Positions 12,831 to 22,782 of a stretch of DNA of 23,414 bases are shown here, piece after piece. The position numbers and the translations under genes were made by a program. Below the pieces are notes generated by a model that did no database searches, had not been told where the DNA came from, and saw only the letters and a program-made list of their open reading frames with translations. Source of the stretch: Octopus sinensis (Eukaryota); assembly GCF_006345805.1 (NCBI RefSeq), contig NW_021836494.1, positions 1-23,414 on the forward strand, given 5' to 3'. The stretch's first letter is position 1. Every line of letters begins with the position of its first letter.

Positions 12831-13062
12831 GACATAATCGTTATTTTAAATTGTATTTTAGCAGTTTAAAGGCTTCACTGTATCTTCTCTTCATTAGGTA
12901 CTTCGCACTTATCTCCTGTCCTTGGATAACAAAAGTTCAATCTTCAAAAACTGACCTAATGTATGTAAAGTTACAGTAACAAGATTGAAGGAGGCTAAAG
13001 TTTCTCTCACAATCAACAGCTTCTTCAAAAGATTGTGAGAAACATAATCAGGGATAAACCAA

Positions 13063-14481
13063 CCCAAAAGTTCTGAGGTACGCTAAACCAACAATTTTGG
13101 AGTACGCTAGCCCAACAGTTTTGGGGTACGCTAGCCCAACAGTTTTGAGGTACGCTAGCTATGCCATCAGTTTGGGGTATGCTAACCCAACAGTTTTGAG
13201 GTACGCTAACCCAACAGTTTTAGGGTTCACTAACCCAACAGCTTTGGGGTACGCTAGCTAGGCCAACAGTTTTGAGGTTCACTAAACCAACAGTTTTGGG
13301 GTACACTAACCCAACAGTTTTGAGGTACGCTAGCCCAACAGTTTTGAGGTACACTAACCCAACAGTTTTGAGGTACGTTAGCCCAACAGTTTTGAGGTAC
13401 GCTAGCCCAACAGGTTTGAGGTACGCTAACCCAATAGTTTTGAGGTACGCTAGCCCAACAGTTTTGAGGTACACTAACCCAACAGTTTTGAGGTACGCTA
13501 GCCCAACAGGTTTGAGGTACGCTAACCCAATAGTTTTGAGGTACACTAAACCAACATTTTTGGGGTGCGCTAACCCAACAGTTTTGGGGTATGCTAGCCC
13601 AACAGTTTTAGGGTTCACTAACCCAACAGTTTTGAGGTACGCTAGCCCAAGAGTTTTGAGGTACGCTAGCCCAACAGTTTTGAGGTACACTAGCCCAACA
13701 GTTTTGAGGTACACTAGCCCAACAGTTTTGAGGTACGCTAGCCAACAGTTTTGAGGTACACTAGCCCAACAGTTTTGAGGTACCCTAGACCAACAATTTT
13801 GAGGTACGCTAACCCAATAGATTTGAGGTACGCTTAACCAACATTTTTGAGGTACGCTAGCCCAACAGGTTTGAGGTACGCTAACCCAATAGTTTTGAGG
13901 TACGCTAGCCCAACAGTTTTGAGGTACGCTAGCCCAACATTTTTGAGGTACACTAACCCAACAGTTTTGAGGTACGCTAGCCCAACATGTTTGAGGTACG
14001 CTAACCCAATAGTTTTGAGGTACACTAAACCAACAGTTTTGGGGTGCGCTAGCCCAACAGTTTTGGGGTATGCTAGCCCAACAGTTTTAGGGTTCACTAA
14101 CCCAACAGTTTTGAGGTACGCTAGCCCAACAGTTTTGAGGTACGCTAGCCCAACAGTTTTGAGGTACACTAGCCCAACAGTTTTGAGGTACACTAGCTCA
14201 ACAGTTTTGAGGTACGCTAGCCAACAGTTTTGAGGTACGCTAGCCCAACAGTTTTGAGGTACACTAGCTCAACAGTTTTGAGGTACCCTAACCCAACAGT
14301 TTTGAGGTACGCTAACCCAATAGATTTGAGGTACGCTAACCCAACATTTTTGAGGTACGCTAGCCCAACAGTTTTGAGGTACGCTAGCCCAACAGGTTTG
14401 AAGTACGCTAACCCAACAGTTTTGAGGTAAGCTAAACCAACAGTTTTCAGGCACGGTTACCCGTTTTGAGGTACGCTAAAC
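13063..14481. repeat. 24-bp minisatellite, about 59 units (cccaacagttttgaggtacgctag)
   Basis: Read directly; includes 23-nt variants and a higher-order duplication. Confidence 0.97.
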
Positions 14482-14796: not shown

Positions 14797-15425
14797 CAGC
14801 GTACCCAAAAACGTTTTGGTCAGCTTGTATGAATCAGTTTCGTTAGAGTACCTCAAACCGTTGAATTAACATATCTCAGAACTCTTGGAGTAGCTTCTTC
14901 AAAATATTCGGTTAGAGTACCTCGGAACTGTTGCATTCACGAATCTCGGAACTATTACGTTGGAGTACCTCAAAAACATTGGTTTAGAGTACCTCAGAAT
15001 CTCTCAGGGTGACCAGCAGACGACACTCAAATTCTGTCGAAACTGATTTCAACCATCTTCTTATTCAACCGAGTTATTTTGCATTCACGAACCTCAGAAA
15101 TGTTGCGTTAGAGTACCTCAAAAGTATTGGTTTAGAGTACCTCGAAAGTTCTCGTTTAGAGTATCTCAGAATCTCTCACAGTGATCAGCAGACGACACTC
15201 AAATTCAGTCGAAACTGATTTCAACCATCTTCTTCCGCCGAGTTATTTTGTGCTCGCGAACCTCAGAAATGTTGCGTTAGAGTACCTCAGAAGTATTGGT
15301 TTAGAGTACCTGAAAAGTACTGGTTTAGAGCACCTCAGAATCTCTCACGGTGATCAGCAGACGACACTCAAATTCAGTCGAAACTGATTTTAACCCTCTT
15401 CTTCTCCCACCGAGTAATTTTGTCT
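14797..15425. repeat. Inverted copies of the 24-mer, from about 14925 embedded in three 169-172-bp tandem units
   Basis: tttagagtacctcaaaagtattgg approximates the reverse complement of the 24-mer; cagcagacgacactcaaatt recurs at 15014, 15186, 15355. Confidence 0.92.
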
Positions 15426-17000: not shown

Positions 17001-17118
17001 GCCACAAATGATCACATTATCTGGAATTATAAAAATCTGCAAGACCTAAGATTTAAAGGAAGATAGTTAAAACAAGATACGTTCTTCACAACCTTGATAC
17101 CAAGTAAGTGGTTGGTCT

Positions 17119-17815
17119 TTACCAGTGCTGATTCCCAACATTTGTGAAAATCGATTGGTCTGTTGAAGAAATCCATTCCATAAACATTAAAACCCGCAAG
17201 ATTCTGTCATCAACTGGAAATCTCCACAGAAATAGTGATACCTATTTCTTCACTGCCCACAAGGTGCTAAACCCAGAGAGGACAAACAAGAACAGACAAA
17301 CGGATTATGTCGATTACATCGACCCCAGTGCGTAACTGGTACTTAATTTATCGACCCCGAAAGGATGAAAGGCAAAGTTGACCTCGGCGGAATTTGAACT
17401 CAGAAACATAAAGACAGGCGAAATACCGCTAAGCATTTCGCCCGTTGTGCTAACGTTTCTACCAACTCGTCGCCTTTTAGAAATAGTAATACCGACAGGC
17501 TCTACCTTAAGAAGAGACAAAGGATTTACAGGCTTAAGATCAGTGCGGACAATCTTTGAATGTTGCATAGTCTCTCCCTCTCTCTCTCTCTCTCTCTCTC
17601 AGACAGCACTTGCTAAACAACAGCAACAAAATTGAAGCGAACACTATCCTTCATGTTGGCAGCGAGCTCCTCAGGATGCTCTCTCTCCCTGGTGGCCTCC
17701 CATGCAACCCCAAATCAGCTGGACTAGCCTACCTCAATGGAGACCAGGATGAGAAACACTCCACATACAAAAAAAGATCATGCATGGCTATGTTCCCACA
17801 ACACTTGAAGAAGAG
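17119..17815 (+). pseudogene. Decayed R4/Dong-type RT thumb-region fragment, interrupted by a SINE-A
   Basis: LPVLIP/TFVKIDWSVEEIHSINIKTRKILSSTGNLHRNSD | RNSNTDRLYLKKR/GLRSVRTIFECCIVS...MHGY; DRLY...GL and K.MHG patterns of R4-clade LINEs. Confidence 0.75.
17242..17478 (-). mobile_element. Full SINE-A monomer (tail type A) with 14-bp target-site duplication
   Basis: agaaatagtgatac (17228-17241) and agaaatagtaatac (17479-17492) flank the element. Confidence 0.92.
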
Positions 17816-17822
17816 GGTAATA

Positions 17823-18756
17823 TTAATTTCGGATTTTGGTACAAGGCCAGCAAGCTCGGGGGAGAGGTAAATCGATTACATCGACCCCAGTATTTCACTG
17901 GTACTTAATTTATCGACCCCGAAAGGATGAAAGGCAAACACGACCTCGGCAGAATTTGAACTCAGAAATACTATTTCTTTACTACCCACAAGGGGCTAAA
18001 CAAAGAGAGGAAAAACAAGGACAGACAAACGGATAAAGTCGATTATATCGACCCCAGTGCGTAACTGGTACTTAATTTATCGACCCCGAAAGAATGAAAG
18101 GCAAAGTCCACCTCAGCGGAATTTGAACTCAGAACGTAACGGCAGACGAAATACCTATTTCTTTATTACCCACAAGGGGATAAACATAGAGGGGACAAAC
18201 AAGGACAGACATAGGTATTAAGTCGATTACATCGATCCCAGTGCGTAACTGGTACTTAATTTATCGACCCCGAAAGGATGAAAGGCAAAGTCCACCTCGG
18301 CGGAATTTGAACTCAGAACGTAACGGCAGACGAAATACCTATTTCTTTATTACCCACAAGGGGCTAAACATAGAGGGGACAATCAAGGACAGACATAGGT
18401 ATTAAGTCGATTACATCGATCCCAGTGCGTAAGTGGTACTTAATTTATCGACCCCGAAAGGATGAAAGGCAAAGTCCACCTCGGCGGAATTTGAACTCAG
18501 AACGTAACGGCAGACGAAATACCTATTTCTTTATTGCCCACAAGGGGCTAAACATAGAGGGGACAATCAAGGACAGACATAGGTATTAAGTCGATTACAT
18601 CGATCCCAGTGCGTAACTGGTACTTAATTTATCGACCCCGAAAGGATGAAAGGCAAAGTGGACCTGGGCGGAATTTGAACTCAGAACGTAGCGACAGACG
18701 AAATACCTCTAAGTATTTCGCCAGGCGTGCTAACGATTCTGCCAGCTCACCGCCTT
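17823..18756 (-). mobile_element. SINE-A pentamer: one head, four 184-nt bodies and a final body with tail type C
   Basis: Bodies 18523-18706, 18339-18522, 18155-18338, 17971-18154; fifth body 17823-17970; head 18707-18756. Confidence 0.95.
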
Positions 18757-18913
18757 AACGTAAGCTGAAAGAATATACGTTGTGGGAGTGAAAAAGCCAT
18801 CACATGACAGAATCCTGTCTACTGACTGGATGACACTTAATAAATGATGTATTGTGTCGAGACAACTCCATTTGTCTCGAAGTGAAACCTCTCTTGGACT
18901 CGTGATCGCTACT

Positions 18914-19338
18914 TTCTCTCTCTCTCTCTCTCTCTCTCTGTTTACTTGTTTCAGTCATTTGACTGTGGCCATGCTGGAGCACCGCCTTTAGTCTAGCAAA
19001 TCGACACTAAAACTTATTCTTTGAAAGTCTAGTACTTACTCTATCGGTCCCTTTTTGCCGAACCGCTAAGTTACGTGGACGTAAACACACCAGCATCGGT
19101 TGTCAAGCGATGTTGGGGGACAAACACAGACACACAAACACACACACACACAGACATATATGTACATATATACGACGGGCTTCTTTTAGTTTCCGTCTAC
19201 CAAATCCGCTCACAAGGCTTTGGTCGGCCCGAGGCTATAGTAGAAGACACTTGCCCAAGGTGTCACGCAGTGGGACTGAACCCAGAACCATGTGGTTGGT
19301 AAGCAAGCTACTTACCACACAGCCACTCCTGCACCTAT
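18914..19338 (-). mobile_element. Full-length SINE-C (tRNA head, CORE-like motif, (GA)n tail)
   Basis: Minus strand A box tggctgtgtggt, B box ggttcagtcc, accttgggcaagtg motif, GA-repeat tail. Confidence 0.88.
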
Positions 19339-19693
19339 CACAAAAATATAAGAAGATAGTGTTGAAAAATGTAAAGAACAATCTCCTGCCATTCGACAGG
19401 GAGTGCTCGTGACCCTCGACAGGACCTCCAAGATCGGAAGATTTTTTTTAACTGGAAACTTGGGACAAACGCTTACAACGGGGTGAACTCCTCTAAAGGT
19501 ACCCTGGTCTTATGTGATGACGTTAAACGGGACAACAGATTGATTCTACCTCGGAAGTAGACCAGGGTGGGATTTGAACTCAGAACGCAAACAGCCTGAA
19601 TGAATACCACAAGGACATAGGACCACTGTATTCTTTTGTGCTGCCAATCCTCACCGTGCCGGAAAAATTGCTTAGGAACATTTCTTCCGAACT

Positions 19694-21525: not shown

Positions 21526-21635
21526 ATGCATTTTAGTATTTAATGCGTTTTCCATTTATTGAGTAACTGAACGCCATGCATCCTGACTTTTGTTTACAAT
21601 AAGTTTATATATGTGTATGTGTGTGTGTATATATA

Positions 21636-22782
21636 TTGGGTTGGCAACTAAGTTCCCGCTGTTTTTTTAATTAAAATTTTTTAAAAGGTTTAATAAAAAA
21701 TAGCAACTAATTAATCAATAATGTATTTACACTTGTTTACAAGTTCTTCCCAACGTTCAACAAGATTTTCAATACCTCGTTGGTAGAAATCACTCGATTT
21801 CGACTCGAAAAATTGATCCAACCAAACTCTCAATTCTGCATTAGTATTGAACGAAACTCCGCGCATAGCATTTAAAAGAAATCGAAAAAGGTAGAAATCC
21901 GTTGGTGCCAAATCAGGAGAGTATGGTGGGTGTAGCAGCACTTCCAAGCCATGCTTTTAAATGGCTTCCTTGGTCATATTGGTCATATTGGCGATATGAG
22001 GGCGGGCGATTAGGTCTTTTCTCTTGAATAGCGTTGAATCGTTCCATCTGTTAAACATAGAGTTCCGCGTTGACCGTTTTGTTCCGTTGAAGTAATTCGT
22101 AATGGATAATCCCTTCCCAGTCCCACCATACGCACAACATCGTTTCACGCACGGTGTCACTTGTTTACCGGGGCTAAGCCATTCCTTACGCTGCTTCATA
22201 ATGATGTGCAGGCACCATTTATCGTCGCTGGTAACAATTCTGTAAATAAATCGTTGCTTGTATCCATGAGTTGAGCGGTGACGAGCAAGCAAACCAGCGG
22301 AGATTGTGGCTCGTTGATTTTTGTTGTTGTCACTTAAAGCATGCGGAACCCATGCTCCATACTTCTGAACCTTTCCCATCGAGTGAAGATGCTTCACTAT
22401 AGCAGTGTGGGAGCATTCCATTTTCTCTGCCAGTTCCCTTGTCGTTTGACGAGAATTTTCATGCAAAAATTGGTTTAATCGCTCTTCATCGAACTCAACT
22501 GGAAGGCCAGAATGAAGTGCATCTTTGAGGTCAAAATTTCCATTTTTGAACTTGGCATACCAATCACGAGCGGTTCTTTCAGCTATGGCACCCTTTCCAT
22601 ACTCAGCACAAATGACGCGAGCAGCTTTTACGGCCTTAGAACCTTAATTAAAAGTAAAAAGAAGGAGGTGTCGAAAATGCTCGTTTTTCTTAACTATTTT
22701 AATGATCTGAAAATAAACAAAAATTAACTAAAATTAACTAGAGAAAAAAAATAGATTCAAAAATTTAAAGACAGCGGGCACT
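21636..22782 (-). mobile_element. Mariner transposon, near full length, decayed
   Basis: TA then TIR ttgggttggcaactaagttcccgctg (21636-21661); partial opposite TIR cagcgggcact (22772-22782). Confidence 0.92.
21711..22706 (-). pseudogene. Mariner (DD34D-type) transposase pseudogene
   Basis: WVPHAL, IVTSDDKW, HPPYSPDLAPTDF motifs; HTH region ERTARDWYAKFKNGNFDLKD; in-frame stop, internal deletions, second catalytic D region lost. Confidence 0.92.

What the first reader, a model, noticed from the sequence alone, without database searches (positions are those of the whole stretch)
17823..18756. Head-less SINE-A tandem array: candidate self-targeting (homing) SINE
Seen: one tRNA-like head is followed by four exact 184-nt bodies joined at aagaaatag|gtatttcgtc, a site between the A and B boxes, then a fifth more diverged body with a different tail. 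The three head-proximal bodies are nearly identical; the fourth differs. Inference: tail-A copies insert repeatedly at the internal GTATT site of an older sibling SINE, reusing its head, so the old body ends up last. Rolling-circle reverse transcription or unequal crossover after a first insertion are alternatives.
Basis: partly seen in the sequence, partly recalled or inferred. Interest (0 to 1): 0.8.

Follow-up and report, generated by a model that had tools for sequence, protein, structure and literature searches.

The report
Head-less SINE tandem arrays, octopus
A short mobile element (SINE) in an octopus-type genome is followed by four extra promoter-less copies of its own body, all joined at one nucleotide. 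A second locus in the window has the same build, so this is a real and recurrent way of turning a jumping element into a small tandem repeat, but it belongs to a kind already described in clams and reptiles.

Summary
On the minus strand, one 48-nt tRNA-like head (18754-18707) is followed by four bodies of exactly 184 nt. They are 90-98% identical and joined at GAAATAG|GTATTTCGTC. A fifth body of another subfamily with another tail closes the array, which ends near 17829.

A second, independent array (7941-8517, plus strand) has the same plan and junction and is flanked by one 13-bp target-site duplication.

The junction lies at the loop edge of a strong anticodon-like hairpin. A solitary tail-A element (17474-17243) has a 15-bp duplication, confirmed against an uninterrupted paralogue. 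Its target begins GGTATT, the same bases as the junction site.

The terminal bodies of the two arrays belong to different subfamilies, so the junction formed at least twice. Mosaic units and array-specific variants show that local unequal exchange or gene conversion also acted.

Best reading (about 0.35): tail-A copies insert site-specifically into sibling SINEs, are resolved by homology, and are then amplified in place. Template jumping within one insertion event, or a multimeric master element, remain real rivals.

The closest known cases are the TSD-(SINE)n-TSD arrays of the blood clam and SINE-derived satellites of squamates. I rate it a new variant of a known kind, of moderate interest.

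The parts
18707..18754 (-). Array B head: 48-nt tRNA-like 5' part with an A-box-like motif (TGGCAGAATCG). It is the only head in the array.
18697..18722 (-). Anticodon-like hairpin GGCGAAATACT-TAGA-GGTATTTCGTC (11 bp). The array junction position is the first base pair of its 3' arm, next to the loop.
   Evidence: MFE -39.3 kcal/mol for the 102-nt head region, z = -3.67. The same hairpin is present in array A and in the solitary element.
18523..18706 (-). Unit U1 (184 nt: B-box-like motif, core, tail-A of subtype A2). It is a mosaic: 5 of its 7 differences from U2 lie in the first 47 nt.
18339..18522 (-). Unit U2 (184 nt, tail-A2), 98.4% identical to U3.
18155..18338 (-). Unit U3 (184 nt, tail-A2).
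17971..18154 (-). Unit U4 (184 nt, tail-A of subtype A1). Its core differs from U3 at 2 of 102 positions and its tail at 11 of 82. It contains the only T5 run of the array.
17829..17970 (-). Terminal unit U5: B2-type core with a 16-nt 5' deletion and a B2-type tail (GCTGGCCTTGTACCAAAATCCGAAA). Its 3' end was set by comparison with a paralogue.
7941..7988 (+). Array A head.
7989..8353 (+). Array A inner units: U1 (181 nt, tail-A1) and U2 (184 nt, tail-A2-like), with junction AAAGAAATAG|GTATTTCGTC.
8354..8517 (+). Array A terminal unit: B1-type core and tail (GGCCCCCTCCCC...GCCTAGAGTAGAAAAG), with junction AAAGAAATAG|ATATTTCGTC.
7924..7936 (+). Upstream copy of the array A target-site duplication, AACCTGAGCCAAA.
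8518..8530 (+). Downstream copy of the array A target-site duplication, AACATGAGCCAAA (12 of 13 bases match).
17243..17474 (-). Solitary SINE-A (head, core and tail-A1), 350 nt downstream of array B in the same host repeat.
17479..17493 (-). Upstream target-site duplication of the solitary SINE-A, GGTATTACTATTTCT.
17228..17242 (-). Downstream target-site duplication of the solitary SINE-A, GGTATCACTATTTCT.

Best explanation
The array is a retrotransposition-seeded tandem that joins the 3' end of one element to an internal site of the next.

Inferred mechanism: a tail-A subfamily of an octopus tRNA-derived SINE integrates preferentially next to GGTATT. That sequence is also the start of the 3' arm of the anticodon-like hairpin in sibling SINEs. 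When the nick falls there in a resident B-type SINE, reverse transcription copies tail-A and the core. The 5' end is then joined through the long homology with the resident, so no second head is made. The result is one precise 184-nt unit, running from GGTATTTCG to GAAATA, inserted between the resident's head and body. Repeats of this step add further units. Unequal exchange or gene conversion between units also adds units and homogenises them.

Shown directly:
- the anatomy of the arrays
- the identical junction at two independent loci
- one target-site duplication around the whole of array A
- the GGTATT target of a solitary tail-A copy
- mosaic units

Inferred only:
- the site preference (it rests on one solitary copy)
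- resolution of the 5' end by homology
- ownership of the head by the resident element
For: - Two arrays share the plan head-(core+tailA)n-core+tailB and the same junction.
- Their flanks are unrelated. Their terminal units belong to different subfamilies and are 72.8% identical, with B1 and B2 tails. The junction therefore formed independently.
- The order of tail-A subtypes differs: A1, A2 in array A and A2, A2, A2, A1 in array B. This argues for several separate events.
- Array A is bounded by one 13-bp TSD.
- The solitary SINE-A has a 15-bp TSD beginning GGTATT. An O. bimaculoides paralogue with a single copy of the site confirms the insertion. GGTATT occurs only 32 times on both strands of the window.
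- Six of the eight tail-A 3' ends seen are followed by GGTAT and a seventh (U4|U5) by GTAT; only the L001 copy is not.
- The head of array B shares GAATCG and GGTGAG with B2-type copies. The head of array A shares GAAACG with B1 copies.
- The junction has no extended homology on its left side, so it did not arise by homologous unequal exchange.
- B_U1-U3 share private variants, and units are mosaics. This supports later growth in place.
Against: - Only one solitary tail-A copy with both ends was available. The second copy (L001 21587-21700) is followed by AGAAAGG, not GGTAT.
- With the 13-15-bp TSDs seen elsewhere, the first 13-15 nt of the inner units should be of the resident's type. In array A they are A-type at positions 13 and 15. 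The nested duplication would therefore have to be 12 bp or less, or the resolution would have to be recombinational.
- Array B has no convincing TSD.
- Assignment of the heads rests on 2-3 positions, one of which is a CpG.
- The head of array B pairs perfectly with U1 in the hairpin (GAAATAC/GTATTTC). This could mean that the head and U1 came from one RNA.
- No array was found in 66 kb of O. bimaculoides or 21 kb of O. sinensis, so how common these arrays are in the genome is unknown.
Confidence: 0.35

Rival explanations
1. Template jumping within a single target-primed reverse transcription event. The LINE reverse transcriptase starts on a B-type SINE RNA. After copying GGUAU at the hairpin apex, it jumps to the 3' end of a tail-A RNA, guided by GGUAU/ATACC microhomology or by a processed 5' end. 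It repeats the jump and finally reads one tail-A RNA through to its head. All units arrive at once inside one TSD.
For: - One TSD surrounds array A.
- Each unit is of one subfamily from its first base: the inner units start A-type and the terminal unit starts B-type.
- Different tail-A subtypes occur in one array.
- The junction sits at the loop edge of a strong hairpin.
- The head of array B forms a perfect hairpin with U1.
- The U4|U5 junction can be read as tail-A+GTAT joined to a copy truncated at TTCTGAG. Two independent O. bimaculoides copies are truncated at the same point.
- Template switching by LINE reverse transcriptase is the accepted route for exchange of SINE modules (PMC4758252).
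Against: - It gives no reason for the GGTATT genomic target of the solitary copy, unless the RNA 3' end also guides target choice.
- The head of array B looks B2-like, not like the one known tail-A head.
- Mosaic units and array-specific variants need later DNA-level recombination anyway.
- One tail-A 3' end lacks GGTAT.
Confidence: 0.25
2. A multimeric master element. The structure head-(core+tailA)n-core+tailB is itself a composite SINE that is transcribed and retrotransposed as a whole using the terminal tail. Unit number changes in the masters.
For: - One TSD surrounds array A.
- The unit consensus contains no T4 run. Array B has none for 740 nt, which is compatible with a long Pol III transcript.
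- Array-specific variants could be lineage markers of a master.
- Dimeric and multimeric SINEs are known (PMC10702118, discussion).
Against: - The two arrays differ in terminal subfamily, in tail type and in the order of A1 and A2 units. At least two unrelated masters would be needed.
- The solitary tail-A copy with its own TSD shows that tail-A alone is a competent 3' end.
- No further copy of either arrangement was found in the DNA available.
Confidence: 0.15
3. DNA-level events only. A tandem duplication arises by replication slippage or fork template switching at the hairpin, followed by unequal crossing-over, with no second retrotransposition.
For: - Palindromic hairpin at the breakpoint.
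- U1-U3 share private variants, units are mosaics, and the arrays are homogenised internally.
- Unequal recombination is the explanation offered for the clam and squamate cases (PMC11481361, PMC10702118).
Against: - Duplication of a single element cannot make inner units of a subfamily different from the terminal unit, with a 23-nt longer tail, and do so twice on different residents.
- A1 and A2 tails are also found outside the arrays.
Confidence: 0.1
4. Rolling-circle reverse transcription of a circularised 184-nt RNA, running from the hairpin loop to the end of tail-A.
For: - Unit length is exactly 184 nt.
- U1-U3 are nearly identical.
- The break lies in an anticodon-like loop, where tRNA-type processing acts. 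This last point is from general knowledge and was not tested.
Against: - Both arrays mix A1 and A2 units.
- U1 and U4 are mosaics.
- Extra jumps would be needed to attach the head and the B-type terminal unit.
Confidence: 0.05
5. Assembly artefact: mis-expansion of a single SINE.
For: None specific. Tandem repeats are prone to assembly error.
Against: - Every unit carries private substitutions.
- Two loci with unrelated flanks show the same build.
- Array A has a clean TSD.
Confidence: 0.03

Closest known systems
TSD1-(SINE)n-TSD1 tandem-like SINE arrays of the blood clam Scapharca broughtonii (Martelossi et al. 2024, PMC11481361)
   Same: - First unit has a complete tRNA head.
- Middle units lack the head and are cut at one fixed position.
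- Last unit has the same head truncation and a complete tail.
- One pair of TSDs surrounds the whole array.
- The host is a mollusc.
   Different: - Here the inner units belong to a different subfamily (tail-A) from the terminal unit, in both arrays.
- The junction lies at the apex of the anticodon-like hairpin.
- A solitary copy shows the same sequence at its genomic target.
- The clam paper proposes unequal recombination and does not report a target preference.
SINE-derived satellites (sSat) of squamate reptiles (Vassetzky et al. 2023, PMC10702118)
   Same: - Tandem repeats made of part of a SINE.
- A longer terminal unit reaches the SINE terminus.
- Independent origin at many loci.
- Unit length is in the 150-180-bp class.
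   Different: - Squamate arrays reach hundreds of units, are homogenised between loci and are subtelomeric.
- The arrays here have 3-5 units, are interspersed, and their units come from two subfamilies.
Double-insertion tandems of transposable elements, including site-specific R1 arrays (McGurk and Barbash 2018, PMC5932611)
   Same: - Tandems are seeded by a second insertion at the same preferred site.
- Non-LTR elements give junctions between a tail and an internal site.
- The tandem later expands by unequal exchange.
   Different: - There the preferred site lies in host DNA (rDNA, promoters) and the target duplication is visible in the junction.
- Here the proposed site lies inside the element's own family, and the duplication would be hidden by homology.
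Template-switch chimeras made by LINE reverse transcriptases, such as SINE module exchange and U6/L1 chimeras (PMC4758252; bioRxiv 10.1101/2025.02.02.635956, title and abstract only)
   Same: Two or more RNAs are copied end to end within one insertion bounded by one TSD.
   Different: Known chimeras join different RNA species, usually once. Here the same family would be joined repeatedly at one internal nucleotide.
Dimeric and multimeric SINEs, such as Alu and the Dip/B1 multimers of jerboa (as summarised in PMC10702118)
   Same: Several SINE-derived monomers lie in one head-to-tail structure.
   Different: - Those multimers consist of full-length monomers, or of a fixed dimer that amplifies as a unit.
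- Here only the first unit has a head, and unit number and order vary.

Membership tests
tRNA-derived SINE | Internal Pol III promoter (A and B boxes) in a tRNA-like head | tested here: inconclusive
   The A-box-like motif TGGCAGAATCG has 2 mismatches and the B-box-like GAGTTCAAATTCC has 3. ARAGORN and Rfam report no tRNA. A cloverleaf-like stem and an anticodon-like hairpin do fold, with z about -3.5.
tRNA-derived SINE | Short, dispersed, multi-copy element flanked by variable target-site duplications | tested here: met
   There are about 14 copies in the window and about 11 in 66 kb of O. bimaculoides. TSDs of 13 and 15 bp were found, and an empty-site paralogue confirms one insertion.
tRNA-derived SINE | LINE-related 3' tail or terminal simple repeat | tested here: inconclusive
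   B-type tails end in (ATT)n. Tail-A is homologous to tail-B1: 0 of 500 shuffles reach the observed score. No partner LINE was found in the DNA available.
TSD-(SINE)n-TSD tandem-like SINE array (Martelossi et al. 2024) | First unit with a full head, middle units truncated at a fixed head position, last unit with the same truncation and a complete tail | tested here: met
   Both arrays show this build.
TSD-(SINE)n-TSD tandem-like SINE array (Martelossi et al. 2024) | One TSD pair around the whole array and none between units | tested here: met
   Array A has a TSD matching at 12 of 13 bases. For array B the result is inconclusive. There are no spacers between units.
TSD-(SINE)n-TSD tandem-like SINE array (Martelossi et al. 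2024) | Units belong to the same SINE family | tested here: met
   All units belong to one family, but to two subfamilies. The inner units carry tail-A and the terminal units are B1- or B2-type. This goes beyond what the clam paper describes.
Double-insertion tandem (McGurk and Barbash 2018) | Target site preserved in the tandem junction, and an insertion-site preference of the element | tested here: inconclusive
   The junction begins GGTATT, as does the target of the one solitary copy. The second tail-A copy does not show this. The sample is too small.
Satellite DNA / SINE-derived satellite | Long arrays at many loci, homogenised between loci | tested here: not met
   Only 3 and 5 units at two loci. 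Units are as different between the two arrays as A_U1 and A_U2 are within array A, about 90-94% identical. No array was found in 87 kb of other Octopus DNA.
Composite (dimeric or multimeric) SINE family | The same multi-unit arrangement copied to many loci, each with its own TSD | tested here: not met
   The two arrays differ in unit number, subtype order and terminal subfamily. With only two loci the test is weak.
CORE-SINE (the octopus OR2 family is listed as one in PMC4758252) | Conserved CORE domain | tested here: inconclusive
No curated SINE library was available.

The most novel reading that the evidence does not exclude
Tail-A elements are a self-targeting SINE subfamily. The 3' end of their RNA, or their LINE partner's endonuclease, selects GGTATT. 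That sequence is built into the anticodon-like hairpin of every sibling SINE. The family therefore supplies its own landing pads. Each hit is resolved by homology into a promoter-less 184-nt unit, giving a direct, sequence-programmed route from a dispersed SINE to an incipient satellite.
Probability: 0.3. Interest if true: 0.65.

Novelty: new variant of a known kind. Interest (0 to 1): 0.45.

Why it matters
How dispersed retroelements turn into tandem repeats is still explained mostly by appeal to unequal recombination. These two arrays add three concrete clues:
- a fixed junction at a hairpin apex;
- inner and terminal units from different subfamilies;
- a matching genomic target for a solitary copy.

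Together these make a specific, testable model in which retrotransposition itself seeds the array by site-specific self-insertion or by template jumping.

Octopus genomes are rich in SINEs (4-12% in the papers read), and SINEs have been linked there to genome rearrangement. If such arrays are common, they would matter in three ways:
- as a source of recombination-prone repeats;
- as a systematic source of error when SINE copies are counted and dated;
- as a natural system for studying 5'-end resolution in target-primed reverse transcription.

If they are rare, this is an ordinary local curiosity of a known kind.

Tried and rejected
- **More arrays through protein databases.** The antisense ORF that spans the junction found no homologue.
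- **Pattern scans.** Exact scans for the junction and for the core motif found nothing in metagenome contigs or in bacterial and archaeal genome contigs.
- **Octopus DNA through transposon proteins.** Mariner and Ty3-like proteins in or near the window gave three O. bimaculoides loci and one O. sinensis locus. These hold about 11 copies of the family, one truncated tail-A copy and no array. Four ENA contigs fetched the same way share essentially no repeats with the window and are not octopus.
- **tRNA or Rfam identity of the head.** Nothing was found, even at E = 10.
- **CORE-SINE membership.** I make no claim either way.
- **TSD for array B.** None is convincing. The ATT-like run I first took for its tail is host DNA.
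- **Segmental duplication of one array into the other.** Rejected, because the flanks are unrelated.
- **Seeding by homologous unequal exchange between GAAATA in the head and GAAATA in tail-A.** Rejected, because that would keep the loop CTTAGA in the junction, and it is absent.
- **Head subfamily typing as a discriminator between nested insertion and template jumping.** There are too few informative positions.
- **Literature.** Searches found no description of such arrays in cephalopods.

Full report
**What the window is.** The 23.4-kb window is eukaryotic DNA rich in microsatellites and SINEs. Its repeats recur in Octopus bimaculoides and O. sinensis chromosomes fetched through a mariner-like and a Ty3-like protein. 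The source is therefore an octopus or a close relative.

**The observation.** TRF reports a 184-nt period, 4.0 copies, 95% matches and score 1327 at 17965-18708.
- Read on the minus strand, the array starts with a 48-nt head at 18754-18707.
- Four units of exactly 184 nt follow: 18706-18523, 18522-18339, 18338-18155 and 18154-17971. They are joined at AAAGAAATAG|GTATTTCGTC.
- A fifth unit (17970 to about 17829) lacks 16 nt at its start and ends in a different tail.
- U1-U3 are 95.7-98.4% identical. U4 is 89.7-92.9% identical to them. U5 is 72-77% identical to the others.
- Each unit carries the B-box-like motif but no A-box-like motif. Both motifs are degenerate, and neither ARAGORN nor Rfam calls a tRNA.
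A paralogue in O. bimaculoides shows that AAATTAATATTACCC after the array is host DNA.

**A second array.**
- At 7941-8517 on the plus strand the same plan recurs: a head, two tail-A units (181 and 184 nt) joined at the same nucleotides, then a unit with a different tail.
- The whole structure is flanked by AACCTGAGCCAAA / AACATGAGCCAAA, a 13-bp target-site duplication with one mismatch.
- The flanks of the two arrays are unrelated.

**The family.**
- Other copies in the window and in O. bimaculoides are mostly monomers with B-type tails, several ending in (ATT)n.
- Tail-A is homologous to the last ~42 nt of tail-B1, with about 23 extra bases in front: 0 of 500 shuffles reach the observed score. 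'SINE-A' is therefore a subfamily, not a different element.
- Tail-A occurs in two subtypes, A1 and A2, and both are also seen outside the arrays.
- The terminal unit of array A is of the B1 subfamily and that of array B is of the B2 subfamily.
- The order of subtypes differs: A1, A2, B1 in array A and A2, A2, A2, A1, B2 in array B.
- The same junction therefore formed independently on different residents. A single inherited composite is unlikely.

**The junction site.**
- The end of the head and the start of the unit form an 11-14-bp hairpin, GGCGAAAUAC-loop-GUAUUUCGUC, with z about -3.5.
- The junction is at the boundary between the loop and the 3' arm.
- To the left of the junction, tail-A and the head share no extended homology. 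A recombination between the GAAATA motifs would have kept the loop in the junction, and the loop is absent.
- The junction is therefore illegitimate, with at most a few bases of microhomology.

**The solitary tail-A copy.**
- A complete head-core-tailA element lies at 17474-17243 on the minus strand. It is flanked by GGTATTACTATTTCT / GGTATCACTATTTCT.
- I joined its two flanks and aligned them to O. bimaculoides. A paralogue about 65% identical (L001 19203-18799) runs straight across the site and has one copy of the 15-mer.
- This is a genuine insertion, and tail-A is a competent 3' end.
- Its target begins GGTATT, the same six bases that follow tail-A at the array junctions (GAAATA|GGTATTTCG).
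- GGTATT occurs 32 times on the two strands of the window, so the chance expectation is about 7e-4.
- The only other solitary tail-A end available (L001, 5'-truncated) is followed by AGAAAGG.

**DNA-level reshaping.**
- B_U1-U3 share variants seen nowhere else, and U1 and U2 share a further one.
- Five of the seven differences between U1 and U2 lie in the first 47 nt.
- U4 differs from U3 at 2 of 102 core positions but at 11 of 82 tail positions.
- A rare GG at positions 46-47 is shared only by B_U2-U4.
- All three units of array A, including the B1-type terminal unit, share GGAG where every other copy has GGGG or GGGA.
- Unequal exchange or gene conversion has therefore acted within each array, and probably produced U1-U3.

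**Mechanism.** Three retrotransposition-based models fit the anatomy.
- *(H) Nested, site-specific insertion.* Tail-A copies insert at the GGTATT of a resident SINE, with the 5' end resolved through homology so that the resident's head is reused. This model explains the solitary copy's target and the weak resemblance of each array head to the subfamily of its terminal unit. It is strained by one fact: positions 13-15 of the inner units are A-type, not resident-type.
- *(T) Template jumping within one target-primed event.* This explains why each unit is of one subfamily from its first base, and why the head of array B pairs perfectly with U1. It does not explain the genomic GGTATT target, unless the RNA 3' end guides both steps.
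- *(M) A multimeric master element.* This is weakened by the different make-up of the two arrays.

Purely DNA-level duplication cannot make inner units of one subfamily on terminal units of two others. Rolling-circle copying cannot mix A1 and A2 units in one array. An assembly artefact is unlikely given the private substitutions in every unit, the second locus and the clean TSD.

I commit to H plus local unequal exchange at about 0.35. I give T about 0.25 and M about 0.15.

**Comparison with what is known.**
- The build matches the TSD1-(SINE)n-TSD1 arrays described in the blood clam (PMC11481361).
- It also belongs with the SINE-derived satellites of squamates (PMC10702118).
- It fits the double-insertion route to tandem elements (PMC5932611).
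- The new elements are the heterogeneous subfamily composition, the hairpin-apex junction and the matching target of a solitary copy.
- I found no report of such arrays in cephalopods.

**Limits.**
- Only two arrays and two solitary tail-A ends could be examined.
- No octopus genome could be scanned, so the frequency of arrays, the site preference and the ownership of the heads remain untested at scale.

Noticed in passing
window 7941-8530 (+): A second head-less array of the same family: a head, two tail-A units and a B1-type terminal unit, with the same junction and a 13-bp TSD. The finding did not mention it.
   Followed up: yes
window 8558-8759 (-) and 8821-8975 (-): Two B-type SINE monomers in the opposite orientation lie directly after array A. 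Together with the array they form a large inverted-repeat configuration, tail to tail, about 40 nt apart.
   Followed up: partly
L002 22155-22592 (-), O. bimaculoides: Two full-length B1-type SINEs lie head to tail, separated by only about 8 nt. This is a tandem of complete elements, unlike the head-less arrays.
   Followed up: no
L001 21587 (+), L002 14450 (+), window 17967 (-): Two independent 5'-truncated copies begin at exactly TTCTGAGTTC. The 16-nt deletion of terminal unit B_U5 ends at the same base. This may be a preferred stop for reverse transcription just upstream of the B-box-like motif.
   Followed up: partly
window 17100-17800 plus 18879-18912 (-); L001 18799-19269: Array B and the solitary SINE-A, 350 nt apart and in the same orientation, both sit in one copy of an unidentified repeat. 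That repeat has a paralogue about 65% identical in O. bimaculoides. About 120 nt between the host sequence and the head of array B (18755-18878) are absent from the paralogue.
   Followed up: partly
window 18927-19346: Another abundant repeat, beginning with (CT)n and containing GTCATTTGACTGTGGCCATGCTGGAGCACCGCC. It is 86-90% identical to copies in O. bimaculoides and O. sinensis loci and is probably a second SINE-like family.
   Followed up: no
window 13061-14479 and 14963-15404: A 24-nt minisatellite of 59 copies (AACCCAACAGTTTTGAGGTACGCT) is followed by a 169-nt tandem repeat of 2.6 copies that contains related 24-mers.
   Followed up: no
window 21604-22764 (-): A degraded mariner-type transposon with an HTH_48 / Transposase_1-like ORF remnant. 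It is 80-84% identical in DNA to copies in all three O. bimaculoides loci.
   Followed up: partly
window 4379-4508 (+): A G-rich 16-24-nt tandem repeat (GGGGTGGGGTATTTGGGGGT). Each unit contains GGTATTTG, so the repeat offers several copies of the proposed target motif, and none is occupied by a SINE.
   Followed up: no
L004 (O. sinensis, 21 kb): There is no copy of this SINE family in 21 kb of O. sinensis, against 14 core motifs in the 23-kb window. Its abundance may differ strongly between regions or species.
   Followed up: no
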